Below are positions 47,537 through 64,000 of a stretch of DNA of 64,000 nt, piece by piece. The stretch spans positions 62,001 through 126,000 of IMG/VR virus record IMGVR_UViG_3300042515_001753. One strand, given 5' to 3'. A program made the translations under genes and the position numbers. Each line of letters starts with the position of its first letter. The first letter of the stretch is position 1. The notes under the pieces are model-generated. The model was not told the origin of the DNA. It was given only the letters and a program-made list of their open reading frames with translations, and made no database searches.

Positions 47537-47557
47537 ATTAATATTTTTTTTAAGTAT

Positions 47558-50500
47558 TTATAAGAGTTTTGGAAGTGCTCCTGTTTGTCTAATTCCAATT
47601 CCCCTTCTTTGAATCGTTGCAAAGGTTGTTAATCCAACATCCACAGTATTTCCGGTTACTCCTATTGAAATTGGAGAACCTGACCTACTAAATCCAGACA
47701 TTCTACCCCAAGAATATTTACCAACAGGATTTGATATACTTCCAGAAGAAGAGAGTCCAGTCGTAGATGTGGTTGATAATATATTACAAGTAATGATTCC
47801 AACAGTACCACTAGAGGAGAACTGATGAATGTAGTAAATATTATCTATAAAAGTTGTTCCAATTCCAACCACCGCAGAATTAGAAGTATTAATAGAAGTG
47901 ACTCCCTTCCCAACTCTTGTATCAAAGATATAAATTGGATATCCAGTAGATAGACCTGTAAATGATGAAGAATTTAAATGGAATTTAAGTGCCAGTGGAT
48001 TACCTCCACTACCTGTTGTGGTTGTAATTCCTGTAATAATTCCAGAGAATCCGTTAATTAAAGTAATATTTGAAATTAATTCTACTGCTCCACTTGCATT
48101 AGTGGAAATTCCATTGACAATTAAAGAACTAAAAGGTTCTGGACTAATAGTATTATCATACTCAAAGAATTCTGCATTATCTACAAATATTTGAGTATCT
48201 GTGGTTGAAAAATCTTTAATAATCTTAGCGGTTGGATAAATTAAAGACTCAATAGAATCTCTAGTTTTATAAACGTCTTCTCCGTTAATTTTCCTATCAA
48301 CTTTTTGCTTAATCCAACTTAATGGTTTATTATTTTCAGAGTCAACACCTTGGTTTGAATATAAATTAGTTTCAAACTTATCGGAGAATGATAAATCAAA
48401 TACTATTCTCTTGTCTTGTGTTATTGTTCCTGGAATTGAATTATTTTTAAGAACTTGTACAGTATCACCTCTTTTTAAAGTTTCATTAATTGAATCATTT
48501 ACAATAACATCAACACCATCAGTTCCTTTATAGAAGAAAATTGCAACATTATCCTCTGGTCTTGGAGCAGTTGTAAATATGAAACTAGTTCCGCCATCAA
48601 ATTGATATGCAACTCCAGGATCTTGAATTACTCCATTTATAACAATTAATAGTGCATTTGAAAGATTTACTTGAGAACCTTCTGAAGATTCAAAACTCAA
48701 TAATTCATTATTATAATATAGTGGGAATCTTGTTCTGACTCCATCCTGATAATTTTTTATAGAATCTATATAATCAAACTCACCAAACTGCCAAGCAGCA
48801 AAAGAATCTGAAAATGTATCAACCACAGTCAATTGGAACTCTGATAATGGAGATGCCAATCCTTTAGCAGTCACCAATCCAACTGGTTTAAATACATCTC
48901 CTCTTCGGAACGAGTAACCCTGTCTTGAAATACTAAATTTAGAAACTTCAAAGTATGTTGATCCTATTCCAGTTGTAGAACTTGCTCCAACTTCGACATT
49001 AAGTAAAAGACCTATTCCAGTATTTGTTGTTGCTCCAACTCCTAATCTAGATACTCCGATTACATTTAAATTTTCATATGAAGGTTCTGATACAAATACT
49101 TGAGGATTCGTATACCCCGTACCTCCTCCAACAACGGCGAATGATAAGACGCCGCCCGCTCCAACTGTTGCCGATATCGTCGCTGCTGCTCCTGTGTGTC
49201 CATTTTGATATACTGAAACTCCTACGGAAACAATACCATTGTATCCAGAACCAAGATTATCGGTAGTTCCTAGTCCAACAGATACTATACTACCCCCTGC
49301 CCCAACTACGGCAGTTACTGCTGCTCCCACAAGAGGTGCATATCCAAGACCAGTAGAAGAACCCAAGGAAACAATTATTCCTCCTCTAGGGGTTTGGTTT
49401 TGATTTACATCAAACTCCGAAGTAATAATATTAAGATTATCTGGATCTCTAATTCCAGAGAATACCACACTAGATATTCCTGAAACAGTATTTTCAATAA
49501 TACTAAAATTATTTTCTGGGTTATTGAGAGTTGTTGGAGTTTGGAAAACACCATTTATGAATAAAATTCCATTTCCTCCACTGGTTCCCAACCCTACAGT
49601 GTTTGCCCCACCGACAGTTAATGTAAAAGTTCTACCAATACCTGTAAATTGACTTGAAATATCGTCATATAGTTGATTTGATGTATAATCATTTCTCAAG
49701 AAAACTCTTCCGGTAAAATCGGAAGTTTCAAAAGTCAAATTACTAGAATCTTTAATTATTTGAGGATTTCCTCTTGGAGATTCTGCAAAGAAAATATCAC
49801 CATCAACAATATTATAAGATCCTTTATAAATTCTTACTGAAGTAGAATCTGTGTGAGTCGATGCCGATGACCCAACAAATCCTCTAGTGACTTCGACTAA
49901 ATTGATATTTCCACTATTTGTAATTGGTCCAACATTGGTTGTTCCCAATCCAACATTAATTATTCCCATATATTCATTATCAATTTTTAGAATATCTTTT
50001 GGTATAATTGTAGATATTCCACTCAAGGCAAATATTGAAGAACCTGCACTTATTTGTCCACCATTATTAAGCAAAGTGTATGATATTGGAGTAAATAATA
50101 ATGGATATTGAACTATATTATCAATAGTAATTAGTGCTTTTTCAAGTTTTTTATCCATTTCTAGTTGATGTGCATTACCGCTACCATATGAAGTAAATGT
50201 AACTGCAATTCCAGAAATAGCATTAGACTTAGTTGTTGCTAATTTAAATGTACTATCTGACAATTTGATGACATATACCTCTGAAGGTAACAATGTCGGA
50301 CCAGCACCAATTTCCATTGCACTAGCACCAACTCCAATAAATGTTGATTTTGGTGTATAGATAAGTTCTTCTAAGTTGCTGAAAAAATGGTTTTGTATAG
50401 TAAATATTCCCGTTGATGGATCTAAAATTGTTGAATTTGTAGGATTAAATCTTTTTGCAAAAATTTCAATTCCATTGGATTTTAAATTAAAATTATTTCT

Positions 50501-53500
50501 ATTAATTCTATTTCCATTAATTGCATTATACTGCTCAATATCAATCGATTCTTCTATTGTTCCATAACTTAAACTTGGAGCAGTATTTTGTGTATCTAAA
50601 GTTGTATACAAGCACTGATTAAATGCTAAAATATTAACCTCAGAAGTTACTGATGGTTCTGGATAAAATTTTAGTATGAAATTACTACCAGAATATTCTC
50701 CACCAAAAGTTCCAATTCCGTTTGTACTTCCGACAGAAAGAAAAGGTGATTGTTGAACATAAATGTTAGTTTCATCCTGCACTAACATTATTTGATGAAG
50801 AGCACTTGTTGACCCAACACTTACTTCTACTAAAGATTTGACTGCATTAAAATTAGTTTTATTCAGTGATATTACAGTTGATGCTGAAGAAACTGTAGAT
50901 GAATAAGTTGATTGATATATAGCACTCCTTTCATTTCCTGGTATTTGACCTGGAGATATGAATCTATATGTATCTGCACCCACAGATGTTGTTCCAAACC
51001 CAACAATCTTTGATCTAACATTTACTGAATTTGGGGAATTGTTAATATAGTTTAATGATAAAACTCCAGAAGAAATGCTTGCACCAAATGAGCCTATGTT
51101 ATTTCCAGAATAATAATTGCTTAAAAATTCAGAATCAAAATAATATTCTGATATATAAGTGTCTGTCCCATCGTGGTTCAAATATACTTCAACAAAGTTC
51201 ATTTGATTTGTTACTGAATCAATAATCTGAATATTTGAATATAATGAAGAAAATTTATTTGCCTGTACGGATATAATTGAAGTTTGTATTCCAGTTGTCG
51301 CAGTTCTATTTGAACCAGTTAAATTGATAAATCCAACAGAAGTTGTTCCAATTCCTGGCAAAACAGAATTAAAATTGCTATTAATTAATTTAATATCATA
51401 ATCAATATTGAATGGATCTTTTGGAACAAATCTTAAGTAATTACTATCATCTACATCATCTGTAATTAATATAAATTCTCCTATAGGTTCTCCAGAAATA
51501 TGCGTAAGTCCAACTCCAGCGTTGACTAGTGTTGATTTTTCAGCCAAAAATGAATTACTTCCATCATTCAGTAAAACTAATTCCGTTAATTGAATTTCGG
51601 TATTGTCCAGACTGGAAACCCTGACCAATATATTATCATAAGATACTCCAGTATTTAATTCTAGTAAATTAATAAATTCACTTGGATTTCCATCAGAGTC
51701 GGAAAATTGACGATTTATGTCATCTATTTTTAAAACTACATTACTTCTACACTCAATATAATCAGTTAATTTTTTATTTTTTAATTTTAAAAACTTTGAA
51801 GAAGTTCCAACTAAATCAATATCTTTTACTAAATCAAAATCATAAATTGTATCTACTCTATTTTCCTCTATTATGTCATAAAGTATACTTATATTATTAT
51901 TGGAAGTTACAACATCAAAGTTTGCAGTTGATGTAATTCCAGTATCTGCAAAATTCTTCAATCCACTTGTATGAACTAAACTATTAACTGGTGTTCTTAA
52001 TTCTTGATATGTAATTGGACTCTTTATAGTATAGGAAAGATTTTGATAATAATCATTATCAGCAACAACTTGATTATCTTGATCCAATTTACCAATATCA
52101 TTAGACCATCCAATATTTTTTTCAATTGAGTAGTCAACCTTAAATCTACCAATACCAGATTCAATTTTATCTATTGTCGCTACATTTCCAGATTCTTTTC
52201 CTACAATAATTTCCCCAACAGACAAATCATAAGTTCCAGATACTTTAATAAATGAATTTTCATAAGAGGAAATTTCTAAATCTCTCTCAGTATTATTTGA
52301 GATTAGTTTTTCTCCAATAATAAACTCAGATTGAATTTGTGTAACATTAAATATGGGATAATCTGTGCTTTTTATAATATTTCCAACAGAATCCTGAATT
52401 GTTTTTGCTATCCCCGTATTTGTGGTTAATCCAGAAATGTTAATTGTTACTGAATCAAGAGTTCCAGCATTACTATAGTTATTAATCGTAAAGAATTGAT
52501 ATCCATAATCTTCAGAATTAAATCCAGTCCCTTCAGTGCTAAATTTTTGAATTCCTTCTACAAATACTTTATCTCCACTAGAAAATGGGAAGGCGGAAAA
52601 TCCTAAAGTTGGTGTTGTTATGAAGCAAGTAAAAATTCCACTTGAAGAAGATTGAACTTGTTGAATACTAATTCCATTAGTATTATTGGTGGTGAATAAT
52701 TGTACCGTTGTTTCTGGAAGACCCTTTGGTTGTTGTATGATATTTACAGAATCAATAGAATTTCCGGACAGTTTTGCTTCTAATATTCCACTATCAATTT
52801 GTTCACCAGTGCTTGAATCCACAATTATTACTGATGGCGCATCAGTATATCCTTTTCCACCATCTGTAACTGTAATAATACCAATTGTATTTGAATTTTT
52901 AATTGTAATTAGTGGAGATATTAATGCAGTTGGTTGTAAAGTTTTATCTGATGAATATTGAAATCCTTCATTAATGATTCTTACTTCTTTTGCATTACCT
53001 ATGGACGTTGATTTTGGAGTAATGTAGGCATCTTTTCCATCGATAGAATTAGATCCTACAAATGTGGGAAGTTTTTTATATCCAGAACTACCAGAAATAA
53101 TATTAATTTTATTAATAGAACCTTTTGCTGATAATGATGTTGTGGTGTATTGCAATTTATCACACTCATTTTGAGTATATGATAATTTTTCCGGTTTTTC
53201 TGATAAAGAAATGCTAAATGTTGTTGACCCTACGCCAGAAATTGTATAATTGGAATTGTATATACTATTCACAAATAATATTTCAGAATAATTACTCACT
53301 TCTTTGTCAGAAGTACTAATATATCCGGATTTTTCTAAATTGTAGTATAATTTAGTTGGTAGATTTTCACTATAATTGATAGTTGAAGAAGCATTAGTAG
53401 AAACTCCAATGGTTCCTATACCAGATAATGTAAATAAGTCGGATGATGGAGTTGAAATAAACTCATTATTATATTGATTATCATAATAAAGTTTAAATTT

Positions 53501-56500
53501 ATATCCCACTAAAGAACTATCGGATAAGTTAAATACTAAGTTATTATTTTTAAATGATTTAATTTGTGGATTTATTAATGAAATACTTTGACTCGACCCA
53601 CCAGTACTGGAGATATTTACAGTTGTTGGAGGAACAGTTTTAGAATCTACATATGTTTCAGAAAGTTTTATTATATTTTCATTAACTCTATAAACATAAT
53701 AAAATCCAGTTGATAATCCGGATGCAACTAAATTGGATGAATATAAAACCTTATCTCCAGTTTTTAAGTTATGTGAATTAATTGAAATAGTATTTGTTGT
53801 AGTATTAATTGCCGTTGAACTAAATCCAATTGGATTAATTAAAATATTGTCAGTTATTAAATCTCTTTTGATATAAATTGATGTGGAAGTTCCAATCCCT
53901 ACAGAAAGATTTGGTTCGATACTTAAACTAATAACATCTCCACTAGAAAGTTCGTGAGAAGTTGATACTGAAACAGTAGACTTAACTCTTTCAACTTTTC
54001 CAACTATCTGTGGATATACACTTTCAAATGAATACTTATCATTATCACTACCATTAGTAATAAAAAATACCTCAGAAGAGTTGAGTGTGGTTTTTATTCC
54101 AATAGTATTAATATTCTTATCAGTTACATATACATTTTGAGGTAAATTAAATTGAGTTCCTGTTGGTGAAGTAGAAACTGCAATATTTGAACCATTATTT
54201 GTAAATGTTACTAGTTGATTATTTGTAAATGGATGATTCTCAATATAAATTCCCTGTGTTGGGACAATTCTGGTAATATTAGAATCTCCAAATTCAAATG
54301 TTAGTTTATTTGTAATTCCAGGTGTAGTACCAATTCCTACTGATTGTACTGGATTAAAAAACACCTTATTATTTACATTAGACTCAAAGTAATCTATTTT
54401 TTGTGAAATAGTAAATGAATCTGGAATAAAGTTTATTTGAGTAGTTGCCGTATGAGATACTCCAGTAGATCCTCTTTGTACTTTAAGTATATTAAGGTTT
54501 TCATATACTTCAAGCACCGATAGTGTTTCACTGCCTATTCTAATACTACTTCCTACAGATACCCTTGTTGGAAGTTGAGTAATGTAAATCTCAGTTGTGA
54601 ATCCAGATGTTGATGAGGGAACATCCTTAAGAACATTTGAGTAATAGGAAGATACTCCAATCTTATATGAATTATTTAACTTGGATAGATTGGTCGAAAA
54701 TCCCGAAATCACAACAAAATCATTATTGGAAAAATTATGATATGGTTTAATGGTAACCTTTACTTCTTCTCCGTCATTATATGTAAAAATAGAATTCTCA
54801 TAAGTTTCTACTGAAGTATCTATTTTTGTAATATCTTTTCCTTCTATTGAAGAGACTCTTGCTACTAATCCACCACCAGAAGTATTGGCACCATCAAAAT
54901 TTAAAACATCATTAACTTTATAATCGGATCCGGAATTAATAATATCAAATGCATTTACAAATCCTTCGGATACTGATTCAACAATTGACTCTTGGTTCGT
55001 AATTTCATTAGTCTCTGTTATAAAATCATTTTTTGCATAATCATCAGACACTTTATATGGTAGAGTATTTCTAAGTAAATTTGAGTTATTAAAATCAAAT
55101 GTTTGATTTAAAGTAGAATTTTCATTTAAAGTATTAGATCTATATTTGTTTCCTACAAAATAGGGAAATATTGGGGTCAAAAAAGTGTCAAGAGTTGCAA
55201 AATATGCATATACTCCATTTGGAAATTCTGGCGTTCTTCCAAATCTTCCATTATTTTCATCCAAGTCTCCAGAATTTGTATACTCATAATCTTCAACAAA
55301 AAATCCTGATGGAAATGAAGGTCTATCGACAACATTGGAAGGATTTAGTGCATATCCAGATTCTAACAATTTAGGAACAGAGTTTGAATCTTCCGAATCA
55401 AAATATCCATATGGTCCATATATTGGATTTCCATCATATGCCCATCCGATTATATTAGATACTTGCAGACCATTATCACCAAATGAATTTCTTAAATTTT
55501 CAAAATATCCACAAACAGAATACTGCAATTCATTTTCAGATTCTATTAAAATCTCATCACCAATCTTTAAGTTATTATTGACAGTTAGAGATCTAATATT
55601 AGCATTTAGAATTGCATTAGAACCTGCAGATTTTACTTCAATTATTGTAGAATTGGTGGAGTATCCAATTCCTGGATTTATTATCTTAATATCTGTTATT
55701 TTTTGGTTAGTAATGACTGGTCTTAAATCTGCTCCGGACCCTACACCAGTTAAATCAGTTACAATCAAATCGGGAATTGAATAATAATCAACACCACCAT
55801 ATTGAATATTTACAGAATTAATTTGACCGTTGGTGATAATTGGTTTTAATTTTGCCTCACTTCCGGTTTTTATTGTTATTAATGGTCTTCTTTCAAGATT
55901 TATAATTGTGGATCCATATCCAACTCCACTTTCATATAGATACACATCTATAATACTGCCTTTAACAATTGGAGATGCTACAAGAGATTGAATCTGTTGA
56001 CTTGTAGTACCAAATCCAACAGGGGTATATTGTATAGAAACAGAAATATCAGGATAACTAAAATATTGATATCCAGATCCAATAGAAGAAAATTTAATAT
56101 AATTTTTTCTAGTGTAGTTTGATATGTCAGTTCCACCAATTCCAGCATCACAAAGTCTAAAAGAATCATCATTATTTTTCAATACATAATATTGAGATAA
56201 TGTTGAAATTCCAATTGTAGATGTTTGATATTGATAAGTTACAAGTTCCCCGTCATTAAATCCGTGGTTTTTAAAATTAATTGTGTTGTTGGATGTAGAT
56301 ATTCCTGCCGAAGAGACAATTAATTCTCTATTCGTGTATCCACTACCACCATTTAATATTTTAATCTCTGATATGGTATTTTTAAATGATGCGGTAGAAA
56401 ACTTATGAATTCCTGCAGTATTAGTTCCACTAAAAGATACTGTATTGATTCCGGATAAGTAATCTGAATTAGTTTGATAGAGTCTGATAGTTCTATTGTT

Positions 56501-59131
56501 ATCAATTTTGGAATAATATGTTGCATTATTTACTAAAGTTAAATTTGTAGACCCAATACCAATTGGAGAATTTCCATTAGAATTGTAAACTATTAATTCT
56601 CCATTACTTAAATTGTGATCCGTTAAAAACGACAATTGATTTGTGGTTGAACTAATTCCTCCGGAATTTGTTGACAACCTGGCATCAAACAAAATATCTC
56701 TCTTTCTCTTTGTAATAATAGGTTCTAATACACAACCAGACCCATTACCGCCAGTTATACCAATAGATACGATTGTATTGATATCATAGTCTTGAGAATC
56801 AATATAAACTTTTTTAATTGACCCACTAACTACTGGACGAACTAATGCTGTAGATCCAGTTCCGGAAGAAACCGATATTAGCGGAGGATTAATGACATCA
56901 TATCCAATTCCACCATTTAATACACTAATAGATTTTAAGGGACCATAGTATACTTTATCATTAGATTTGTAATTATTAATTTCTACACCATTAATTAACA
57001 TTCCAATTGAACCTGGAAGTGTTAATTCTCCAGTTCCGGTATCGATATTTTCAGATAATGGAAATTTTTTAAATAATTTTTGAGCTCCAATTATGTTAGA
57101 TTTTTGAGAATATAATGTAAATCTATGAGTTTGATTAACAAAATTTGAATCTGAGAATGTTAAGAAATCATTAGTTCCAACAAATGATAATGATGAATAT
57201 AGTCTTATTTTATTGGAAGGATTTAGAACTTGCACATAATAATCTCCAGTATCTAATCCAACAATAGGTGTTCCTGATGGTTGGTAGTAGACTCTATCTC
57301 CAGTAATAAATGGAACAGGGTTTTGAAATACTATGCTTGTATAGTTATTATCTATTTCATCGGATATCTCTAGTGCAACTGATGATTTAATATCTTTTGT
57401 TATTCTGTATGTAAAATTTCCATTATATCCATCTCTACCTGAAGGTAATGAGTTAGAAGCTACATATGCATACTCATCATCAGTATATAAATTTTGAATA
57501 TCGGATAAAATAACATTATTTCCAAACTGTATTGGAACAATAGTGCTATTTGCGGTATTAATTTTTCTTCTTAAATCATATTTTGCTTCATTTTCTGGAG
57601 AAAATACCAAATTATCAATAATAACTCTATTTTGTGAAAATATAATGTCCGAAACATATGCACCCGAGGATGACACTACAGTAGTACTATCTCTTTCTAA
57701 AATTTCAACTTCATCCCCGATTTTTAAACTAGACCTGTCAATAGGACTTGTAAGGGTAAAGTTGCTGATATTTTCTATTTCATATCTAGATCCCGTATTG
57801 TATATCCAGGAATTTGCAAAAACTTCTTCGTATGTCTTATTTTGCTGTGGATTTTTAATTAAATCTCCAATATTTTTAACTGAGATTATTTGCCCTTCAT
57901 CCAAATTCAAAGTATCCGATACTTGAACAAATTTGGATAATACTCCAGTAAGTCTCAACTCAACTTTTTTGTTTAGATCTCCATCTTCATAACCATAATA
58001 AATTTCATCAGATCTTATATCATCTGTTGAGAAAATCTCAGATATAATTCCTGTACATCCAAAAAACTGATTAATACTTTTGCTAGTATAAGTAATTGTA
58101 TTGTTTCCAGATATGATTGTTCCTTGTTCTGGGAATCCTATTGTAGAATCTACTGATATTACTGATGACCCAATAGTGACATTTTTTAGACTTTTTGTAT
58201 TTGGGGTAATTGTAAAATTTCCAAGAACAGCAGAAGTATCATTATATCCAACAAAAAGTGAAATTTTAAAATATTGTACATTATTTCTAGTAAATGGTGC
58301 TATTTCAGAAATTGAGGCACTAGTACCATCATCATTAAATTTTTTAATTGTTTGACCTAGTAATTTAGAAGGATTTCCAGAAATTCTTTCTGCAATTACA
58401 ATTTCTCTTCTTATAAATTCTGCCGAAGATGGTTTAATTAAAAAATTCTCTAAATTTACTACCTGAGGAGTTACTCCATATAAAACATTAAATAAAATTC
58501 TAAATGATTCATCAGTTCCTTTTGCCTGATAAAAGGATCTTGCTTCTTTTATAAAGTTACCAACATTTAAATCTGATACAAAATCAACGTCTTCTAGACC
58601 AGGAGTAAAAGTATACTTTATTTTTTTATAAAATTCTTTTAGGAATAAAGAACTTAGATTTTGTACAGAAGAACCTTCATTATGGGATGCAGATACCGAT
58701 TCCGAAAATACTAACTCCTCTTGATTCGAATCTGAATGATAATTAGTAACACCACTAAATCCACGAACACATCCAGTAAATGTATTTGTAGTTATTCCAG
58801 TATATGTAATAATTTCATCATCAATTTTTAATAATCCATAAGTTTGAGGAAATCCTTTAGTGGAAGTAACTGTAACAATTCCCGAAGAAGATGAAATATT
58901 GGTAGATAGTTCGGTAGATCCTACAATAACTTCTGGAGTTAAATTATCTAACTTCAGATATTGGTCTAAATTTTCTGCAATATCAACTACGCCACTTTGA
59001 TATTCTTGAGAAATATAATATTGCTTTAAAAATTCTGCCGTATTTGGACTCTCATCCAAAATAAAATTTGGAAGCTGATTTTCAATAACTTGCTGAACCT
59101 TAACTCTAGATTCGAACCCAGTCTGTATCAT
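47558..59131 (-). CDS. gp7: baseplate wedge initiator, giant form (3857 aa)
   Basis: N-terminal QLPNFI...EFLKQYYISQE, FYQAKGTDESFRILF, IIGWAYDGNPIYGPYG, DNDYYQNLSY.IKS, VHTSGLKNF; located between gp6 and gp8. Confidence 0.88.
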   Translation of the reverse strand: MIQTGFESRVKVQQVIENQLPNFILDESPNTAEFLKQYYISQEYQSGVVDIAENLDQYLKLDNLTPEVIVGSTELSTNISSSSGIVTVTSTKGFPQTYGLLKIDDEIITYTGITTNTFTGCVRGFSGVTNYHSDSNQEELVFSESVSASHNEGSSVQNLSSLFLKEFYKKIKYTFTPGLEDVDFVSDLNVGNFIKEARSFYQAKGTDESFRILFNVLYGVTPQVVNLENFLIKPSSAEFIRREIVIAERISGNPSKLLGQTIKKFNDDGTSASISEIAPFTRNNVQYFKISLFVGYNDTSAVLGNFTITPNTKSLKNVTIGSSVISVDSTIGFPEQGTIISGNNTITYTSKSINQFFGCTGIISEIFSTDDIRSDEIYYGYEDGDLNKKVELRLTGVLSKFVQVSDTLNLDEGQIISVKNIGDLIKNPQQNKTYEEVFANSWIYNTGSRYEIENISNFTLTSPIDRSSLKIGDEVEILERDSTTVVSSSGAYVSDIIFSQNRVIIDNLVFSPENEAKYDLRRKINTANSTIVPIQFGNNVILSDIQNLYTDDEYAYVASNSLPSGRDGYNGNFTYRITKDIKSSVALEISDEIDNNYTSIVFQNPVPFITGDRVYYQPSGTPIVGLDTGDYYVQVLNPSNKIRLYSSLSFVGTNDFLTFSDSNFVNQTHRFTLYSQKSNIIGAQKLFKKFPLSENIDTGTGELTLPGSIGMLINGVEINNYKSNDKVYYGPLKSISVLNGGIGYDVINPPLISVSSGTGSTALVRPVVSGSIKKVYIDSQDYDINTIVSIGITGGNGSGCVLEPIITKRKRDILFDARLSTNSGGISSTTNQLSFLTDHNLSNGELIVYNSNGNSPIGIGSTNLTLVNNATYYSKIDNNRTIRLYQTNSDYLSGINTVSFSGTNTAGIHKFSTASFKNTISEIKILNGGSGYTNRELIVSSAGISTSNNTINFKNHGFNDGELVTYQYQTSTIGISTLSQYYVLKNNDDSFRLCDAGIGGTDISNYTRKNYIKFSSIGSGYQYFSYPDISVSIQYTPVGFGTTSQQIQSLVASPIVKGSIIDVYLYESGVGYGSTIINLERRPLITIKTGSEAKLKPIITNGQINSVNIQYGGVDYYSIPDLIVTDLTGVGSGADLRPVITNQKITDIKIINPGIGYSTNSTIIEVKSAGSNAILNANIRSLTVNNNLKIGDEILIESENELQYSVCGYFENLRNSFGDNGLQVSNIIGWAYDGNPIYGPYGYFDSEDSNSVPKLLESGYALNPSNVVDRPSFPSGFFVEDYEYTNSGDLDENNGRFGRTPEFPNGVYAYFATLDTFLTPIFPYFVGNKYRSNTLNENSTLNQTFDFNNSNLLRNTLPYKVSDDYAKNDFITETNEITNQESIVESVSEGFVNAFDIINSGSDYKVNDVLNFDGANTSGGGLVARVSSIEGKDITKIDTSVETYENSIFTYNDGEEVKVTIKPYHNFSNNDFVVISGFSTNLSKLNNSYKIGVSSYYSNVLKDVPSSTSGFTTEIYITQLPTRVSVGSSIRIGSETLSVLEVYENLNILKVQRGSTGVSHTATTQINFIPDSFTISQKIDYFESNVNNKVFFNPVQSVGIGTTPGITNKLTFEFGDSNITRIVPTQGIYIENHPFTNNQLVTFTNNGSNIAVSTSPTGTQFNLPQNVYVTDKNINTIGIKTTLNSSEVFFITNGSDNDKYSFESVYPQIVGKVERVKSTVSVSTSHELSSGDVISLSIEPNLSVGIGTSTSIYIKRDLITDNILINPIGFSSTAINTTTNTISINSHNLKTGDKVLYSSNLVASGLSTGFYYVYRVNENIIKLSETYVDSKTVPPTTVNISSTGGSSQSISLINPQIKSFKNNNLVFNLSDSSLVGYKFKLYYDNQYNNEFISTPSSDLFTLSGIGTIGVSTNASSTINYSENLPTKLYYNLEKSGYISTSDKEVSNYSEILFVNSIYNSNYTISGVGSTTFSISLSEKPEKLSYTQNECDKLQYTTTSLSAKGSINKINIISGSSGYKKLPTFVGSNSIDGKDAYITPKSTSIGNAKEVRIINEGFQYSSDKTLQPTALISPLITIKNSNTIGIITVTDGGKGYTDAPSVIIVDSSTGEQIDSGILEAKLSGNSIDSVNIIQQPKGLPETTVQLFTTNNTNGISIQQVQSSSSGIFTCFITTPTLGFSAFPFSSGDKVFVEGIQKFSTEGTGFNSEDYGYQFFTINNYSNAGTLDSVTINISGLTTNTGIAKTIQDSVGNIIKSTDYPIFNVTQIQSEFIIGEKLISNNTERDLEISSYENSFIKVSGTYDLSVGEIIVGKESGNVATIDKIESGIGRFKVDYSIEKNIGWSNDIGKLDQDNQVVADNDYYQNLSYTIKSPITYQELRTPVNSLVHTSGLKNFADTGITSTANFDVVTSNNNISILYDIIEENRVDTIYDFDLVKDIDLVGTSSKFLKLKNKKLTDYIECRSNVVLKIDDINRQFSDSDGNPSEFINLLELNTGVSYDNILVRVSSLDNTEIQLTELVLLNDGSNSFLAEKSTLVNAGVGLTHISGEPIGEFILITDDVDDSNYLRFVPKDPFNIDYDIKLINSNFNSVLPGIGTTSVGFINLTGSNRTATTGIQTSIISVQANKFSSLYSNIQIIDSVTNQMNFVEVYLNHDGTDTYISEYYFDSEFLSNYYSGNNIGSFGASISSGVLSLNYINNSPNSVNVRSKIVGFGTTSVGADTYRFISPGQIPGNERSAIYQSTYSSTVSSASTVISLNKTNFNAVKSLVEVSVGSTSALHQIMLVQDETNIYVQQSPFLSVGSTNGIGTFGGEYSGSNFILKFYPEPSVTSEVNILAFNQCLYTTLDTQNTAPSLSYGTIEESIDIEQYNAINGNRINRNNFNLKSNGIEIFAKRFNPTNSTILDPSTGIFTIQNHFFSNLEELIYTPKSTFIGVGASAMEIGAGPTLLPSEVYVIKLSDSTFKLATTKSNAISGIAVTFTSYGSGNAHQLEMDKKLEKALITIDNIVQYPLLFTPISYTLLNNGGQISAGSSIFALSGISTIIPKDILKIDNEYMGIINVGLGTTNVGPITNSGNINLVEVTRGFVGSSASTHTDSTSVRIYKGSYNIVDGDIFFAESPRGNPQIIKDSSNLTFETSDFTGRVFLRNDYTSNQLYDDISSQFTGIGRTFTLTVGGANTVGLGTSGGNGILFINGVFQTPTTLNNPENNFSIIENTVSGISSVVFSGIRDPDNLNIITSEFDVNQNQTPRGGIIVSLGSSTGLGYAPLVGAAVTAVVGAGGSIVSVGLGTTDNLGSGYNGIVSVGVSVYQNGHTGAAATISATVGAGGVLSFAVVGGGTGYTNPQVFVSEPSYENLNVIGVSRLGVGATTNTGIGLLLNVEVGASSTTGIGSTYFEVSKFSISRQGYSFRRGDVFKPVGLVTAKGLASPLSEFQLTVVDTFSDSFAAWQFGEFDYIDSIKNYQDGVRTRFPLYYNNELLSFESSEGSQVNLSNALLIVINGVIQDPGVAYQFDGGTSFIFTTAPRPEDNVAIFFYKGTDGVDVIVNDSINETLKRGDTVQVLKNNSIPGTITQDKRIVFDLSFSDKFETNLYSNQGVDSENNKPLSWIKQKVDRKINGEDVYKTRDSIESLIYPTAKIIKDFSTTDTQIFVDNAEFFEYDNTISPEPFSSLIVNGISTNASGAVELISNITLINGFSGIITGITTTTGSGGNPLALKFHLNSSSFTGLSTGYPIYIFDTRVGKGVTSINTSNSAVVGIGTTFIDNIYYIHQFSSSGTVGIITCNILSTTSTTGLSSSGSISNPVGKYSWGRMSGFSRSGSPISIGVTGNTVDVGLTTFATIQRRGIGIRQTGALPKLL

Positions 59132-59132
59132 A

Positions 59133-61022
59133 TTACGCTCTTATTAAATTCCCGTTTGAATAACTTGATGTGTAATAGTCTCTGGTAAATAATGTACCGG
59201 ATATTTCATCACCAGAGGCAATTACATCTCTTACCATATTTATTGTGCTTTCTGAAATACTAAAATTTAAATATAAATCTTTTAGTCCTATAACATCATT
59301 TGATTCAGGAAATGCTTGTATTTCAATAATATTGTTTTCCTTAGATGTCGATATAATATTTACGGTTCCTAATTTAATTTCACCCTTTTCATAATCAACT
59401 GTTCCGGCAGATTTTATAACAACTCTTATAGTTCCATCACTTAAAGGTTTTACTATTGACAATATTCCGGTTTTTCCGTCAGTATTAGGAACATCCGTTA
59501 GGTATACTGTATCCGAATCTATTGAAATTTTAAATCCTGTACTTTTAATATTAAAACCATCAGAATTAATATGAAACTTATTTCCAAAGCATAATTCATA
59601 TTGAGCAAACTGGTTTATCATTGCCATCAAATCTCTTCTAATTCTAACCTTAGTAATATTAGAAGTTATAGAAGTATCACTATTGTCAATTATTTGAAGA
59701 ACCTTACTATACTTAAATCTTCCACCAAATGAATTAAGATCTATAGAATTTGAGTACTCTGTTAGTGAATTTACTACTTTTGTTTTTAGTGATTCTACTG
59801 CAGATACTTGAGAATAGTTATAATAAATTGATGAATCAATCTCCACATATAATATTTTAAGATCAATTATTTTTTGATTAATTCCAGAAATAGTATATTG
59901 CTTTAATTTATTAATAATTTGTTGTTTGTTAAAATCAGAAACAAAAGTTCCATTTTTTGGTTTAATAATTATCGATACCGTACCAAATTCCGGAGGTTCT
60001 AATTCTTCACCACCAATAATAGCAACCGATTCTGTATCCGGATATATTTTTTTTATAATTGCCTCATAATCTCTTGATGTTACTGCTCTATATTGAGATG
60101 AATATATTCTTGGTGCAAAATATTTAACAGAATCTATAGATTCTATATCAGAACCATTTTGAGATGGTTGATTTGTTACGACAGAGACTGAACCTATGTC
60201 AATTGTCGCGTTACTTGCATTTCTAACACTTCCAGAAAAAGAAAATGAAGAAGCGCCATTACCCTCTTCACCATCAGTAACAATATAATTTACCGTGATT
60301 ACTGCATTATTTTCTAATTTTTGCCCGATAAGACCATCGCCAAAAAGTAATTCATATTTTTCATCCTGAACTTCTTGTAATAGATAGATTCTTGAAGACG
60401 AATTTACTTCGAGAATATTATCAACAGAAGAATATTCTACTCCAAGATCACTATCATTAATTCCTTTCACATAAACGGAAATAGTTGAGGTGTCTATGAA
60501 TGGATTGTTTAATATAAATCTTTGGTCCAGAGATCCATCCACCACAAATTGTTTTGTCAAGAAGGTTCCTTGATAAATGTCAATATTATTAAAGGATGCT
60601 GTTCCTCCAACAACATTTGATGATATACTTTCTGGAATTGAAAATGTATATGATGTATTATCAACGGACCCTACACACACCAGACCTGCCTGTAAGGTGA
60701 GTGTGGGAGTATTTGCGGCAGTAGATATGTCAAATGATACCTGTGCCTTTGCTGCCGTCCTGGAACGAGGTACATATCCAATATTTCTTGCCAGTGAAAC
60801 GACATTTTCACGAAGAGTTGCCGAATCCAAAAAGGATTCATTCACAATCATGTTTGAGTTGAATGCCGTAATATAGGTATTATACGCCAGAGTATCTATT
60901 AATACCGAAAAATTAGACCCTTCAAAGTCAAAATCCGTGAATGTGGAGTTGGCACGGAGATAATCCTTGATAGAGGTCTTTATCTGATCAAAATCTAGAT
61001 TTGTAAACTTAGTAAAAGGCAT
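59133..61022 (-). CDS. gp6: baseplate wedge subunit
   Basis: LDFDQIKTSIKDYL, DFDFEGSNFSVLIDTLAYNTY, SATLRENVVSLARNIGY, QYRAVTSRDYE. Confidence 0.96.
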   Translation of the reverse strand: MPFTKFTNLDFDQIKTSIKDYLRANSTFTDFDFEGSNFSVLIDTLAYNTYITAFNSNMIVNESFLDSATLRENVVSLARNIGYVPRSRTAAKAQVSFDISTAANTPTLTLQAGLVCVGSVDNTSYTFSIPESISSNVVGGTASFNNIDIYQGTFLTKQFVVDGSLDQRFILNNPFIDTSTISVYVKGINDSDLGVEYSSVDNILEVNSSSRIYLLQEVQDEKYELLFGDGLIGQKLENNAVITVNYIVTDGEEGNGASSFSFSGSVRNASNATIDIGSVSVVTNQPSQNGSDIESIDSVKYFAPRIYSSQYRAVTSRDYEAIIKKIYPDTESVAIIGGEELEPPEFGTVSIIIKPKNGTFVSDFNKQQIINKLKQYTISGINQKIIDLKILYVEIDSSIYYNYSQVSAVESLKTKVVNSLTEYSNSIDLNSFGGRFKYSKVLQIIDNSDTSITSNITKVRIRRDLMAMINQFAQYELCFGNKFHINSDGFNIKSTGFKISIDSDTVYLTDVPNTDGKTGILSIVKPLSDGTIRVVIKSAGTVDYEKGEIKLGTVNIISTSKENNIIEIQAFPESNDVIGLKDLYLNFSISESTINMVRDVIASGDEISGTLFTRDYYTSSYSNGNLIRA

Positions 61023-61023
61023 T

Positions 61024-61425
61024 TTATCTCGTTGCCTCTAGTATGAATGAATATTCTTGAGTTGGAAATTCTTGTCCTATAATATCAAAAATAATTGTTA
61101 CATTAAATGTATTGTCATCCGGAATAGGATCTACTTGAACTATTACATTATTAACTCTTGGTTCAAAGTTATTAATGGATATTTCAATTTGACTTTGTAT
61201 TACTGATGCAGTACCAAAATCAACAAATTCAAATAAACTTTTTGTAATATCGGACCCTAATAGAGAATTGAAGAATCTTTCTGTCGGAATAGTTTCTACA
61301 ATATTTCTTACAGATCTTCGAATTGCGTTTTCATTTTTTAATATAGGCAGATCCTTTGTCACGGGATGTGGTTCAAAGGATAAACTGATATCTTTAAATG
61401 ATCTGGATATCCTTTGAATTGCCAT
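61024..61425 (-). CDS. gp25: baseplate wedge subunit
   Basis: FKDISLSF..HPVTKD, NAIRRSVRNIV.T..TERFFN..LGS, NFEPRV; TATAAATA at 61445-61452. Confidence 0.94.
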   Translation of the reverse strand: MAIQRISRSFKDISLSFEPHPVTKDLPILKNENAIRRSVRNIVETIPTERFFNSLLGSDITKSLFEFVDFGTASVIQSQIEISINNFEPRVNNVIVQVDPIPDDNTFNVTIIFDIIGQEFPTQEYSFILEATR

Positions 61426-61453
61426 CGAACAAAAGTTTTTTATTTATTTATAT

Positions 61454-61630
61454 CTACTTCCAAGAAGAACCATAGTTTGGTTCTGTTCCATATGTCCAGT
61501 CATCATAGTCTTCATCATTACGAATTTTTTCGTGTAGTTCAACCTGTTTTTTTAGATTGTGTTTTGGTGCAATGTCATAAACAACTTCTTGAATAACTCT
61601 TTTTTGATTGTCGTCAGATTCGAATAGCAT
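61454..61630 (-). CDS. small hypothetical protein (58 aa)
   Basis: Not in the ORF track. MLFESDDNQKRVIQEVVYDIAPKHNLKKQVELHEKIRNDEDYDDWTYGTEPNYGSSWK; SD AGGAG 6 nt upstream. Confidence 0.7.
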   Translation of the reverse strand: MLFESDDNQKRVIQEVVYDIAPKHNLKKQVELHEKIRNDEDYDDWTYGTEPNYGSSWK

Positions 61631-61700
61631 TTGAAACTCCTGTTTTAATGAATAAAACAGAACTTTTATGAAGGAGGTTTCTATCTCCTATTAGTATTTA
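61631..61700 (-). promoter_or_regulatory. late promoter and structured leader with competing anti-SD helices
   Basis: TAAATA at 61695-61700, then AGGAG...CTCCT...CTGTTTT/AAAACAG...AGGAG-N6-ATG. Confidence 0.45.
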
Positions 61701-62039
61701 ACGATTTACTTCACGAAGATTATAATTATCGGAATTTAGATATTTTAATAACTCAATTGCAACTAATCTAGGATTTCCTTCACCGCAAGTATAGACATCA
61801 ATTGCTATACAACCATTTTCAGGCCAGGTGTGACAAGATACATGACTTTCTGAGAGGGCAATGACGATTGTACATCCTTGTGGAAGAAAACAATGGGAAA
61901 AAATGTTTAAAATAGTCATATTTGCCCGACTAATACCCTTCTCCATTGCTTCTTGAAGAGATATTACATCATTTAAGAGGTCAAATTTAACATCATACAC
62001 CTCTAAAAGGAGATGAGTTCCCATTGAATACTGTTCCAA
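61698..62039 (-). CDS. speD: S-adenosylmethionine decarboxylase proenzyme
   Basis: GTHLLLEVY, F.PQGCT.VIALSESHVSCHTWPE.G..AIDVYTCG; pyruvoyl self-cleavage site E|SH. Confidence 0.92.
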   Translation of the reverse strand: MEQYSMGTHLLLEVYDVKFDLLNDVISLQEAMEKGISRANMTILNIFSHCFLPQGCTIVIALSESHVSCHTWPENGCIAIDVYTCGEGNPRLVAIELLKYLNSDNYNLREVNR

Positions 62040-62062
62040 TTATTATTCTAGTAAAAAGTTAT

Positions 62063-62698
62063 TTATTTCTTCTCTAAGTCAACAATTTCGTACATATAAT
62101 GATCTGATGTTTCCAGTTTTCTCTTATTTTCTACAGAATAAACTGTCATATCAATCTCATAACCAGGATTTTTATCGATCCTATTGAATGTCCAGGCATT
62201 ATCATACCAAATAATGCGATTGTTTGGATATGCATAGTAATTTCCTGTTTCAACTTTAAATAAATGAGCACACTTATGCTCCGGAGTCTCTGAAAAATTT
62301 AAATCGGGTACTCCTTTATTCTCCCAAGACCAGTCGAGAGTAAACATGTAAGTTCCTAATACTTTTTTTCCGTCCGGACGAATGAGTTGTGCATCTAAAT
62401 TTGCAAGTCTGTGCCTTCTTTGAACATCAATATAAGGTGAAAAGCAGTCCCAATACATAATGTCTTCTAAGGGTTCTATTTCTGCATTCGAATCCCAACA
62501 AAAGGCATGTAAAGGTCTTCTAGTCCAATTTACACCATTCTCTAAGAATGCTTCGAAAAGAGGTACACGTTTTTCTATACTTGCCACAGAGTGAACATCA
62601 CATTTAGTTACTTCGCCATGACCTTTATTCTGATTATAAAGAAACTCATTACGAATGTAACAAGACCAATCTGGTAAACTATGATTTAAGTAAGCCAA
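62063..62698 (-). CDS. conserved phage hypothetical protein
   Basis: YLNHSLP...YIRNEFLY, WDCFS, Y.FTLDW, EHKCAH, YPNNRIIW. Confidence 0.8.
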   Translation of the reverse strand: MAYLNHSLPDWSCYIRNEFLYNQNKGHGEVTKCDVHSVASIEKRVPLFEAFLENGVNWTRRPLHAFCWDSNAEIEPLEDIMYWDCFSPYIDVQRRHRLANLDAQLIRPDGKKVLGTYMFTLDWSWENKGVPDLNFSETPEHKCAHLFKVETGNYYAYPNNRIIWYDNAWTFNRIDKNPGYEIDMTVYSVENKRKLETSDHYMYEIVDLEKK

Positions 62699-63063
62699 TT
62701 CATTTCCTCTTGTTGGTATGTGTTAAGTAGTTCTTCGTCTTTAGAAATGTCTTTAGATGCGTACCAAGATCCATTTTCATAATTATATTTTACATTTTCA
62801 TTATAAAGTGTATGATTAATATAATATGCACCATAAGTTTTGTTGAGATCACAATCAATCCAGAATCCTTCATCATCATTAAGAGTGATTGATTTCACTC
62901 TACCGTGAATGTTATCTGAAATCGAATTCCAAGATATTTTTATTTTTTTATTTGATTCAAATATGACTGTTCCTTTTGGAATATCCACTAAAGAAAAAAC
63001 ACCTACTCCAGCACAGACTTTACTAGGTGCTAGGTAGGTGTAGAGTGTTAAATCAGGAGTCAT
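62686..63063 (-). CDS. SET-domain protein-lysine methyltransferase
   Basis: SKVCAGVGVFSLVDIPKGTVI (motif I), YINH (NH motif), ASKDISKDEELLNTY (ELxxxY pseudo-knot). Confidence 0.82.
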   Translation of the reverse strand: MTPDLTLYTYLAPSKVCAGVGVFSLVDIPKGTVIFESNKKIKISWNSISDNIHGRVKSITLNDDEGFWIDCDLNKTYGAYYINHTLYNENVKYNYENGSWYASKDISKDEELLNTYQQEEMNWLT

Positions 63064-63066
63064 CCC

Positions 63067-63210
63067 TTATCCCTGACCTCTATATCTTTTACGAGCTTTA
63101 TTACGAGACGTAGCAGAATACTTAGTATGAGCACCACAACCTTGCTTGGTCTTCTTGGGAAGAGATTCGATTACCTGCTTTCCACCACCCGATGATTTTT
63201 TAATTGCCAT
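63067..63210 (-). CDS. small basic peptide ending YRGQG (47 aa)
   Basis: Not in the ORF track. MAIKKSSGGGKQVIESLPKKTKQGCGAHTKYSATSRNKARKRYRGQG. Confidence 0.75.
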   Translation of the reverse strand: MAIKKSSGGGKQVIESLPKKTKQGCGAHTKYSATSRNKARKRYRGQG

Positions 63211-63374
63211 TAATTTTCTCCTATAATTTCAGTTTCAATTTCATTTGGATTTGGAGAACCTGTCTGATAAAATTGTTCCGACAGATCCTCCATAGTATTA
63301 AAGTATTCTTCTTCTGTAAGATTGGAATAAATTTTACGACCCTTACAGATTATATTGTAAGATTCGTTAGACAT
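63210..63374 (-). CDS. small acidic hypothetical protein (54 aa)
   Basis: Not in the ORF track. MSNESYNIICKGRKIYSNLTEEEYFNTMEDLSEQFYQTGSPNPNEIETEIIGEN; one-base overlaps with the genes on both sides. Confidence 0.7.
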   Translation of the reverse strand: MSNESYNIICKGRKIYSNLTEEEYFNTMEDLSEQFYQTGSPNPNEIETEIIGEN

Positions 63375-64000
63375 CAAATCACTCTTGTCTTTTCGTGACC
63401 GACTCTAATACGAGGATCGCACCAAATTTCAAATCCTGCTTCCTTTGCATCCAAACAGAATGATACATCTTCTCCACACATATCCTGAACTTCTCCGGAT
63501 TCAAAGACTTGCATCTTGGGAGCAAACCAGGGATACTTCATTTCGGAGTGTTCAAATACTCCGTGCTTAATCAGTAACCAACCAAATCCTGCATAATCAA
63601 CGGTGAATGGTTTACGACGCTTTGAGATACTCTCAACAGTTTCGTGATTCATAACTCCACCATTATTACGGAAGTCATCTTCTTCCATCCAGTGAGCGAC
63701 TGATGTGGTGTGCCCATCTTCTGTTGCATACCATCCCGATGCGATATCCCTATCCATCAGAACAAGTTGCCAGAATTTTTCAGTATTAAAGACAATATCA
63801 GAGTCAATCCAAAGTTGCCAATCATACTTAAGTTTTCCATCCCAAGGAAGCTGGTCAGGTCCACGAAGAACATTTGCACCAAGGCACTTGCATCTTGCAA
63901 AGTTTACCATCGATGAATAGTCTTGGGAGATTTGAATACTTGCACCGTTCTGTACAAGATCAAAACATAATTGAACAAAACTCTTTAGGTAGGCATATGA
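63374..64000 (-). CDS. GT-A fold glycosyltransferase-like protein; start lies beyond the window
   Basis: Frame open to base 64000 (SYAYLKSFVQLCFDL...); WIDSD (DxD), GFGWLLIK, GEDVSFC, VGHEK. Confidence 0.78.
   Translation of the reverse strand, partial: SYAYLKSFVQLCFDLVQNGASIQISQDYSSMVNFARCKCLGANVLRGPDQLPWDGKLKYDWQLWIDSDIVFNTEKFWQLVLMDRDIASGWYATEDGHTTSVAHWMEEDDFRNNGGVMNHETVESISKRRKPFTVDYAGFGWLLIKHGVFEHSEMKYPWFAPKMQVFESGEVQDMCGEDVSFCLDAKEAGFEIWCDPRIRVGHEKTRVI

What the first reader, a model, noticed from the sequence alone, without database searches (positions are those of the whole stretch)
62686..63063. Phage-encoded minimal SET-domain methyltransferase beside SAM-metabolism genes
Seen: all three SET signature segments in 125 aa, with no Cys-rich post-SET region. 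It lies in a tightly packed run with a glycosyltransferase, a Lys-rich peptide and speD. Established: SET enzymes methylate protein lysines; the chlorovirus vSET targets histones and plant SET enzymes methylate Rubisco. Cyanobacteria lack histones. Inference: a phage protein-methylation system with an unknown target, such as a host Rubisco, ribosomal or nucleoid protein, the adjacent Lys-rich peptide, or virion proteins.
Basis: partly seen in the sequence, partly recalled or inferred. Interest (0 to 1): 0.7.

Follow-up and report, generated by a model that had tools for sequence, protein, structure and literature searches.

The report
Phage SET methyltransferase with fixed partner gene
A marine cyanophage carries a real, minimal SET-type protein-lysine methyltransferase gene. 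Its one constant companion across many phage lineages is the overlapping 211-residue virus-only gene long mislabelled 'purM', not the nearby SAM-decarboxylase gene or the lysine-rich peptide.

Summary
ORF 62686-63063 (minus strand, 125 aa) matches Pfam SET over the whole model (E 2e-10, 41.5 bits, cut-off 22.4). It keeps the GxG, NH and ELxxxY motifs in 26 relatives that are 49-95% identical to it. Its model is closest to chlorovirus vSET (Z 10.6).

The proposed links are not supported. speD lies near 2/10 SET-bearing and 15/70 SET-lacking loci. The Lys-rich peptide is in 443 phage records against 7 with SET, and it is absent from the non-cyanomyovirus SET contexts.

It overlaps the SET stop by 13 nt and starts at a TTG that shares two bases with SET's Trp123 codon. 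P211 sat beside the SET gene in 80/80 IMG/VR loci and in about seven other neighbourhoods, in both gene orders. Some of those phages look related to phages of heterotrophic bacteria.

P211 usually occurs without SET. It has no PurM domain. Its model shows two small beta-barrels.

Best reading: an active lysine methyltransferase that works on or with P211. The target is unknown. The SET gene is already annotated in related phages; I found no paper describing the pairing.

The parts
62686..63063 (-). Minimal SET-domain gene (125 aa). Motif codons on the minus strand: G19 63009-63007, G21 63003-63001, N83-H84 62817-62812, Y116 62718-62716, W123 62697-62695.
   Evidence: Pfam SET E 2e-10, full model. 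Invariant motif residues in 26 relatives. Structural match to vSET 3kma_A, Z 10.6, rmsd 1.7 A over 70 residues; all 50 listed matches are SET or SMYD proteins. The family profile aligns to the MLL3/MLL4 SET domain at E 6e-6.
62063..62698 (-). P211: a 211-aa virus-restricted protein (phrog_3704; legacy names 'PurM' and 'ferredoxin'). It is the constant neighbour of the SET gene.
   Evidence: Adjacent to SET in 80/80 IMG/VR loci and in further contexts L005, L008, L010, L013, L014, L016, L178 and L181. No Pfam, NCBIfam or PDB sequence match. The model has two small beta-barrels. All structurally similar Atlas clusters are viral.
62686..62698 (-). 13-nt overlap of the SET 3' end (AAT TGG CTT ACT TAA) with the P211 start (TTG GCT TAC TTA A..). 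The P211 TTG start shares two bases with SET's Trp123 codon.
   Evidence: Read from the sequence. The same 13-nt overlap occurs in 65 loci, 49 of them with a TTG start. P211 genes without SET start with ATG in 65 of 71 loci and with TTG in 2.
63067..63210 (-). 47-aa Lys/Arg-rich peptide (phrog_516). Context only: a core cyanomyovirus gene, not specific to SET.
   Evidence: phrog_516 E 8e-23. Found in 443 phage records. It lies 9-60 nt upstream of P211 in most loci without SET. Absent from the non-cyanomyovirus SET loci.
61698..62039 (-). speD (S-adenosylmethionine decarboxylase, 113 aa). Context only.
   Evidence: PF02675 E 2.9e-30. It occurs beside P211 equally often with and without SET.
63210..63377 (-). 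55-aa ORF (phrog_3252, unknown function). Context only.
63374..64000 (-). Gene running off the window end (phrog_1574, unknown function; weak glycosyltransferase match). Context only.
   Evidence: phrog_1574 E 3e-112; phrog_34859 glycosyltransferase E 3.4e-7; no Pfam family.
61445..61452 (-). TATAAATA (T4-type late-promoter-like motif) just upstream of the gp25 baseplate gene. It separates the SET-P211-speD run from the baseplate genes.
   Evidence: All 10 matches in the window are on the minus strand, but the total count is not above chance.

Best explanation
ORF 62686-63063 encodes a catalytically competent minimal SET-domain protein-lysine methyltransferase. It belongs to a phage-specific family of about 120-145-residue proteins. 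The family is not free-standing. It is an optional add-on to a second phage gene, P211 (62063-62698), beside which it is always encoded.

In this window the two genes overlap by 13 nt. P211 starts at a weak TTG that shares two bases with SET's Trp123 codon, so P211 is probably translated by ribosomes finishing SET.

The most likely mechanism is that SET uses SAM to methylate a lysine either of P211 itself or of a protein that P211 binds. The only lysine invariant in every P211 examined is K142, in the E-x-P-E-H-K motif. Methylation would then tune whatever P211 does during infection.

Shown: SET identity, motif conservation, fold, and the strict gene linkage. Inferred: catalytic activity, translational coupling, functional or physical coupling to P211, and the identity of the methyl acceptor.
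For: SET identity:
- Pfam SET match over the whole model.
- G19, G21, Y80, Y81, N83, H84, E111, L112 and Y116 are invariant across 26 relatives that are 49-95% identical to the window protein.
- AF2 model with pLDDT 80.8. Its best structural match is vSET, and all 50 listed matches are SET or SMYD proteins.
- The family profile aligns GxG, NHS and EELxxY to MLL3/4.

Family size:
- 156 clusters at 90% identity.
- 212 IMG/VR stretches.

Linkage to P211:
- P211 is directly adjacent in 80/80 IMG/VR loci: downstream in 77, upstream in 3.
- It is also adjacent, or one gene away, in unrelated neighbourhoods. These are nrdA-(homing endonuclease)-P211-SET-nrdB, near PolB, among repair genes, among glycosyltransferases, and beside a TylF-type methyltransferase.
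- The linkage persists for distant SET variants of 143 and 197 aa, and with either P211 subfamily, which are about 31% identical to each other.
- On a P211 tree, SET presence needs at least 10 gains or losses, always at P211's side.

Overlap:
- The genes overlap by 1-13 nt in 95 of the 98 loci where SET lies upstream.
- The P211 start is TTG in 49 SET-bearing loci, against 2 of 71 loci without SET.
Against: - No biochemical data exist.
- P211 exists without SET in most phages: 112 phage records against 7, and 70 of 80 sampled loci. P211 therefore does not need methylation.
- No P211 lysine is conserved specifically in SET-bearing loci.
- Most of the 80 loci are cyanomyoviruses that share this arrangement by descent, so the number of truly independent contexts is about seven, not eighty.
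- Only 80 of the 212 SET-bearing IMG/VR stretches were examined.
- Adjacency could reflect a two-gene mobile cassette without any direct interaction.
- P211's function is unknown.
Confidence: 0.55

Rival explanations
1. SET methylates a host protein, such as a ribosomal, nucleoid or translation factor protein, or Rubisco. It does so independently of P211, and the two genes merely travel together as a small mobile cassette.
For: - P211 usually occurs without SET.
- No SET-specific lysine was found in P211.
- Homing-endonuclease or HNH genes lie next to the pair in some loci, which fits mobility.
- Known bacterial and archaeal SET proteins methylate chromatin-type proteins (PMC3980110, PMC2904774).
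Against: - The pairing holds in both gene orders, with two P211 subfamilies about 31% identical to each other, and over SET divergence down to about 34% identity. That is hard to sustain by hitch-hiking alone.
- The genes overlap, and the P211 start codon is changed to TTG to fit the end of SET.
- A Rubisco or other cyanobacterium-specific target fits poorly with contigs whose nrdB and PolB are nearest to proteobacterial phages.
Confidence: 0.25
2. One reading: SET, speD and the Lys-rich 47-aa peptide form a phage methylation system, with the peptide or virion proteins as substrate and speD tuning SAM supply.
For: - All these genes lie on one strand within 1.5 kb in the window.
- The peptide is rich in Lys and Arg.
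- speD lies within 3 kb of one non-cyanomyovirus SET-P211 pair (L014).
- One bacterial small SET gene sits inside a speD-speE operon (L182).
Against: - speD frequency is the same with SET (2/10; 14/80 in the other sample) and without it (15/70).
- speD is absent next to SET in S-B05-type phages, Sf-CH1b and SynMITS9220M01.
- The peptide is in 443 phage records, nearly all of them without SET, and it is missing from the non-cyanomyovirus SET loci.
- The polyamine context did not recur in the other bacterial and archaeal relatives examined.
Confidence: 0.08
3. The protein is a degenerate SET fold that binds a ligand or partner but no longer transfers methyl groups.
For: - It is very short and lacks pre-SET and post-SET regions.
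- It has no PHROG family.
- Single-sequence matches to solved SET proteins are weak.
Against: - All SAM-binding and catalytic motif residues are invariant over the family.
- vSET, of similar size, is an active enzyme (own knowledge).
- The C-terminal D/N-W is kept even at the cost of the P211 start codon.
Confidence: 0.07

Closest known systems
vSET of Paramecium bursaria chlorella virus 1 (PDB 3kma)
   Same: A virus-encoded minimal SET protein of about 120 aa with no pre-SET or post-SET domain. It is the best structural match to the model (Z 10.6, rmsd 1.7 A over 70 residues).
   Different: Only 23% identity over the aligned core, and not found by sequence search. vSET belongs to a virus of a eukaryotic alga and methylates histone H3 (own knowledge). 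This protein belongs to bacteriophages, whose hosts have no histones, and it always comes with the partner gene P211, a linkage I know of no report of for vSET.
MLL3/MLL4 (KMT2C/D) SET domains
   Same: The closest solved structures by profile sequence search (E 5.6e-6 to 1.7e-5). The GxG, (Y/F)INHS and EELxxY segments align.
   Different: These are catalytic domains of very large eukaryotic proteins. They have a Cys-rich post-SET region and depend on WRAD partner proteins. The phage protein ends just after the catalytic Tyr.
Bacterial and archaeal SET proteins (Chlamydia NUE/cpnSET; Methanosarcina SET; reviewed in PMC3980110, PMC2904774)
   Same: Small prokaryote-world SET proteins thought to methylate non-histone or chromatin-like proteins. 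Distant small SET relatives of the phage family exist in bacterial and archaeal MAGs.
   Different: The cellular relatives examined lack P211 and lack the phage family's C-terminal E-x-D-W/F ending. The pathogen examples are secreted effectors that act on host histones.
SET genes already annotated in cultured cyanophages (Sf-CH1b XYM57557.1 'SET domain-containing protein-lysine N-methyltransferase'; RN05-S XYR95748.1 'methyltransferase'; S-B05, S-B43, RB11-B)
   Same: The same family (51-54% identity) in the same position: 47-aa peptide, then SET, then 'PurM', upstream of gp25.
   Different: These are annotations only. The searched literature holds no functional study and no mention of the SET-P211 pairing. 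In SynMITS9220M01 only the last 64 codons of the gene are annotated.

Membership tests
SET-domain protein-lysine methyltransferases (Pfam PF00856) | Match to the family HMM above the curated threshold, over the whole domain | tested here: met
   E 2e-10, 41.5 bits against a cut-off of 22.4, model positions 1-105 of 105. Confirmed in six frames.
SET-domain protein-lysine methyltransferases (Pfam PF00856) | SAM-binding GxG motif and (R/Y)F/Y-x-NH motif | tested here: met
   G19, G21, Y80, Y81, N83 and H84 are invariant in 26 relatives. They align to GLG and YINHS of MLL3/4.
SET-domain protein-lysine methyltransferases (Pfam PF00856) | C-terminal ELxF/YxY motif carrying the catalytic tyrosine | tested here: met
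   E111, L112 and Y116 are invariant. They align to EELTYDY of MLL4.
SET-domain protein-lysine methyltransferases (Pfam PF00856) | SET beta-fold with the pseudoknot at the active site | tested here: inconclusive
   The fold matches SET structures only (Z up to 10.6). Foldseek global TM is only 0.44-0.48, and the knot itself could not be inspected.
SET-domain protein-lysine methyltransferases (Pfam PF00856) | SAM-dependent methyl transfer to a lysine | not testable with these tools
   Needs an enzyme assay.
vSET-type minimal viral SET | About 120 aa with no pre-SET or post-SET region | tested here: met
   125 aa. The protein ends 9 residues after Y116, with no Cys cluster.
vSET-type minimal viral SET | Close sequence kinship to chlorovirus vSET, and a histone H3 target | tested here: not met
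   There is no sequence-level hit to vSET, and identity in the structural alignment is 23%. The carriers are bacteriophages.
PurM / AIR synthetase (the legacy name of the partner gene P211) | AIRS (PF00586) and AIRS_C domains | tested here: not met
   No AIRS or AIRS_C family appears among the Pfam hits up to E 10 for 25 members. AIRS is absent from the virus record while the control finds it in 14/14 cellular genomes. The model is almost entirely beta-strand.
Royal-family methyl-lysine readers (Tudor/chromo/PWWP/BAH/Agenet), considered for P211 | SH3-like five-stranded barrel | tested here: inconclusive
   Residues 3-70 and 90-170 each align to Tudor, BAH, chromo, PWWP and Agenet domains at Z 5-6.7. 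They also align to KOW, SH3 and integrase barrels. Z below 8 may only reflect a common arrangement.
Royal-family methyl-lysine readers (Tudor/chromo/PWWP/BAH/Agenet), considered for P211 | Aromatic cage and sequence-family membership | tested here: not met
   No Tudor, chromo, PWWP, Agenet or BAH Pfam match at E up to 10 in 25 members. That part is untested.

The most novel reading that the evidence does not exclude
Phages carry a portable two-gene 'writer plus reader or substrate' module. A minimal SET lysine methyltransferase is translationally coupled to P211, a virus-only protein built of two Tudor-like barrels, and either methylates P211's invariant Lys142 or is steered by P211 to a universally conserved bacterial target. 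This would be a chromatin-style methyl-lysine signalling pair working in bacterial virus infection. It would also mean that the cyanophage 'purM' gene counted as a purine-synthesis gene in ocean surveys is something else.
Probability: 0.2. Interest if true: 0.8.

Novelty: new variant of a known kind. Interest (0 to 1): 0.55.

Why it matters
Protein-lysine methylation by SET enzymes is a hallmark of eukaryotic chromatin, and its role in bacteria and their viruses is almost unexplored. This work gives a concrete, testable pair: one small enzyme and one constant partner. Both genes are present in cultured Synechococcus phages (S-B05, RN05-S, Sf-CH1b), so the substrate question can be tested at the bench.

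It also removes two tempting but unsupported ideas, the link to speD and SAM supply and the Lys-rich peptide as substrate. In addition, it flags that the widespread cyanophage 'purM' auxiliary metabolic gene, still used as a purine-synthesis marker in ocean metagenome studies (PMC9983427), has no PurM domain and has a different predicted fold.

Tried and rejected
- **Complex prediction of SET with P211.** It returned no verdict (score 0.01). This is not evidence for or against binding.
- **Search for a P211 lysine conserved only where SET is present.** None was found. The differences follow clades, and K142 is invariant everywhere.
- **Sequence searches for P211.** Pfam, NCBIfam and PDB searches, with a single sequence and with a profile, gave nothing. 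The ESM Atlas feature search returned only unnamed clusters.
- **Fold searches for P211.** Foldseek against PDB and AFDB gave only weak Tudor-like hits (E 0.01-0.4, TM about 0.2). I treat these as a lead, not a finding.
- **Polyamine link.** One bacterial small SET gene lies in a speA-speD-speE-SET-...-deoxyhypusine-synthase operon. The context did not recur in the other relatives found in genomes, and speD is not enriched beside phage SET genes. Rejected as an explanation.
- **Promoter and terminator scan of 60900-64000.** Not above shuffled expectation, so the operon structure stays unresolved.
- **Literature searches.** Searches for phage or cyanophage SET proteins found no functional study.
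- **PHROGs.** No PHROG family covers the SET protein.

Full report
**Where the window comes from.** The window is part of a 146-kb uncultivated virus record from IMG/VR, estimated 68% complete. Its gene content around the finding is that of a T4-like cyanomyovirus (Kyanoviridae). It has gp25 and gp6 baseplate genes and a 3857-aa baseplate protein downstream. The nearest cultured relatives are Synechococcus phages at about 80-82% DNA identity over parts of the region.

**The observation.** ORF 62686-63063 (minus strand, 125 aa) is a SET domain.
- Pfam PF00856 matches over the entire model (1-105/105) at E 2e-10 and 41.5 bits, against a curated cut-off of 22.4.
- A search of 5.8 billion proteins found 156 clusters of relatives, most of them 119-128 aa long.
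- In an alignment of 26 members that are 49-95% identical to the window protein, the residues that define SET chemistry are invariant: G19 and G21 (SAM-binding GxG), Y80-Y81-x-N83-H84 (the NH motif), and E111-L112...Y116 (the motif carrying the catalytic tyrosine).
- A profile of the family aligns these three segments to the GLG, YINHS and EELTYDY segments of the MLL3/MLL4 SET domains at E about 6e-6.
- The AlphaFold model (pLDDT 80.8) matches only SET or SMYD proteins. The best match is chlorovirus vSET (Z 10.6, rmsd 1.7 A over 70 residues).
- Foldseek global TM scores are modest (0.44-0.48), so the fine structure, including the pseudoknot, is not verified.
- There is no post-SET region. The protein ends at N-W-L-T, nine residues after Y116.

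speD is real (PF02675, E 2.9e-30). The 47-aa basic peptide is phrog_516. The upstream gene is phrog_1574, with only a weak glycosyltransferase match. None of these is specific to SET.
- The peptide occurs in 443 phage records, almost all cyanomyoviruses, whereas SET occurs in 7.
- In loci without SET the peptide gene lies 9-60 nt upstream of the next gene, P211. In cyanomyoviruses SET is therefore an insertion between these two genes.
- speD lies within 3 kb in 2 of 10 SET-bearing and 15 of 70 SET-lacking loci of one sample, and in 14 of 80 SET-bearing loci of another. That is no enrichment.
- In the cultured SET-bearing phages speD is not adjacent.

**The neighbour that was missed.** Between SET and speD lies a 211-aa ORF (62063-62698), here called P211. 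It overlaps the SET gene by 13 nt. SET ends AAT TGG CTT ACT TAA, and P211 begins at the TTG that shares two bases with the TGG of Trp123. I then looked at where relatives of the SET gene lie.
- In all 80 IMG/VR loci retrieved with the SET profile, a P211 gene is directly adjacent: downstream in 77 and upstream in 3.
- Contigs carrying more distant SET relatives (33-48% identity, 126-197 aa) show the same pairing in quite different neighbourhoods.
  - Between nrdA and nrdB, in one contig with a homing endonuclease (L052, L055, L078).
  - 1.4 kb upstream of a PolB gene (L016).
  - Among repair and replication genes, with one small ORF between the two genes (L013).
  - Among glycosyltransferase genes, with the gene order reversed (L008, L010).
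  - After a gene run that begins with a TylF-type methyltransferase (L014).
  - With a SET that carries an N-terminal extension (L181).
  - In 220-250-kb cyanomyovirus-like contigs with a 143-aa SET (L178-L180).
- The adjacent ORFs in these contigs were confirmed as P211 homologues: E 3.6e-103 to 7.9e-111 by BLASTP for L005-L016, and E 1.6e-42 to 7.5e-116 against the P211 profile for L178-L181.
- The nrdB and PolB of two of these contigs are closest to those of Xanthomonas, Erwinia and Proteus phages and of the Pseudomonas phage PA5oct (55-59% identity). The pair is therefore not confined to cyanophages.

**The linkage runs one way.** P211 occurs in 112 phage records, including pelagiphages and Flavobacterium phages. 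Of the 80 IMG/VR loci with the most similar P211 genes, only 9-10 have SET.
- On a tree of 132 P211 proteins, SET presence needs at least 10 changes, 4 of which are forced by well-supported branches.
- P211 comes in two subfamilies about 31% identical to each other, and SET is found beside both.
- P211 is much more conserved than SET: 65-92% against 34-52% identity for the same pairs of loci.
- Where SET lies upstream, the genes overlap by 13 nt (65 loci), 4 nt (29) or 1 nt (1).
- In 49 of those loci the P211 start codon is TTG, against 2 of 71 where SET is absent.
- SET's conserved C-terminal D/N-W forces the T of this TTG. The end of SET is therefore kept at the expense of P211's start codon, and P211 is probably translated by coupling to SET. 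This last step is an inference.

**What P211 is.** It is annotated 'PurM', 'phosphoribosylaminoimidazole synthetase' or 'ferredoxin' in phage records. It is treated as a purine-synthesis gene in the cyanophage literature (PMC1079782, PMC3037559, PMC9983427). The name does not hold.
- No AIRS or AIRS_C family appears among the Pfam hits up to E 10 for 25 members, and no hit is significant or shared by most members.
- There is no NCBIfam or PDB sequence match.
- The AIRS domain is absent from the virus record, while the control finds it in 14 of 14 cellular genomes.
- The model (pLDDT 71) is almost entirely beta-strand.
- All structurally similar ESM Atlas clusters are viral.
- An exhaustive structural comparison splits the model into two small barrels (residues 3-70 and 90-170). 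Each resembles SH3-like barrels at Z 5-6.7. Most of the hits are Tudor, BAH, chromo, PWWP and Agenet methyl-lysine readers, but KOW, SH3 and integrase barrels also appear.
- At these scores only the general fold can be claimed.
- Invariant residues include R16, E18, E49, W83, Y117, D122, E137-x-P139-E140-H141-K142, Y157-P-N-N160, D166 and E190-N191.

**Mechanism.** I commit to the following.
- The SET protein is an active SAM-dependent lysine methyltransferase (probability about 0.8).
- It is functionally tied to P211 (about 0.65).
- P211 is either its substrate or the subunit that brings it to a target. K142 is the only lysine invariant in all members.
- P211 works without SET in most phages, so methylation would be an optional modulation.
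- A host target shared by cyanobacteria and heterotrophs remains possible. A cyanobacterium-specific one such as Rubisco is less likely.
- The complex prediction gave no verdict and is not used as evidence.

**Comparison and novelty.** The protein works like vSET and other minimal SET enzymes and meets the sequence-level membership tests for the SET family. It is not a close relative of vSET. The gene is already annotated as SET or methyltransferase in Sf-CH1b and RN05-S and in JGI metagenomes, so its mere existence is not new. I found no paper on phage SET proteins or on the SET-P211 pairing. I rate it a new variant of a known kind, with moderate interest.

Noticed in passing
window 62063-62698 (minus strand), and homologues in P-SSM2, P-SSM4, P-HM1, S-SM1 and HTVC008M: The gene called 'purM' (or 'ferredoxin') in cyanophage and pelagiphage records has no PurM (AIRS) domain. 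Its predicted fold is an almost entirely beta, two-barrel one, and only viral clusters resemble it. Ocean surveys that count it as a purine-synthesis gene may be counting something else.
   Followed up: partly
window 63067-63210 (minus strand): The 47-aa Lys/Arg-rich peptide (phrog_516) is present in 443 phage records, nearly all cyanomyoviruses. It normally sits 9-60 nt upstream of P211. Its function is unknown.
   Followed up: partly
L184:2021-6032 (uncultured archaeon MAG) and L182:1186-8068 (bacterial contig): Distant small SET genes in cellular genomes lie beside a PurD-like (GARS) ATP-grasp gene. In L184 three small genes stand in a row after it: two were confirmed as SET by Pfam and the middle one by similarity to the query SET. 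An M29 peptidase and a radical-SAM/SPASM gene follow. In L182 one SET gene lies inside a speA-speD-speE-SET-GARS-arginase-deoxyhypusine synthase run. This hints at peptide or amine modification systems.
   Followed up: partly
L078:3663-5363 and L052:875-1874: The P211-SET pair is inserted between nrdA and nrdB. In L078 it sits together with a homing endonuclease (phrog_655), at the same kind of site where T4-type phages carry mobile endonuclease genes. The pair may spread as a cassette.
   Followed up: no
L002:4001-4363 (Synechococcus phage SynMITS9220M01, MT408532.1): The SET homologue matches over 4001-4357, but the record annotates only a 64-aa 'hypothetical protein' at 4169-4363. The gene is under-called or has a disrupted 5' part in that record.
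   Followed up: no
window, ten sites; e.g. 61445-61452 and 47555-47562 (minus strand): All 10 exact TATAAATA (T4 late-promoter-like) motifs lie on the minus, coding strand. Several are just upstream of structural genes (gp25, and the gene after the 3857-aa protein). The total count is not above chance, but the strand bias is complete.
   Followed up: partly
L181:4001-4594 and L013:4411-4629: One SET variant (197 aa) has a roughly 70-residue N-terminal extension of unknown nature. In L013 a 72-aa ORF sits between SET and P211, and by eye it resembles an Smr-type small domain. Neither was tested.
   Followed up: no
window 47558-59131 (minus strand): A 3857-aa ORF follows the gp6-like gene. It corresponds to the giant 'baseplate wedge initiator' or YHYH-domain proteins of related cyanomyoviruses.
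   Followed up: no
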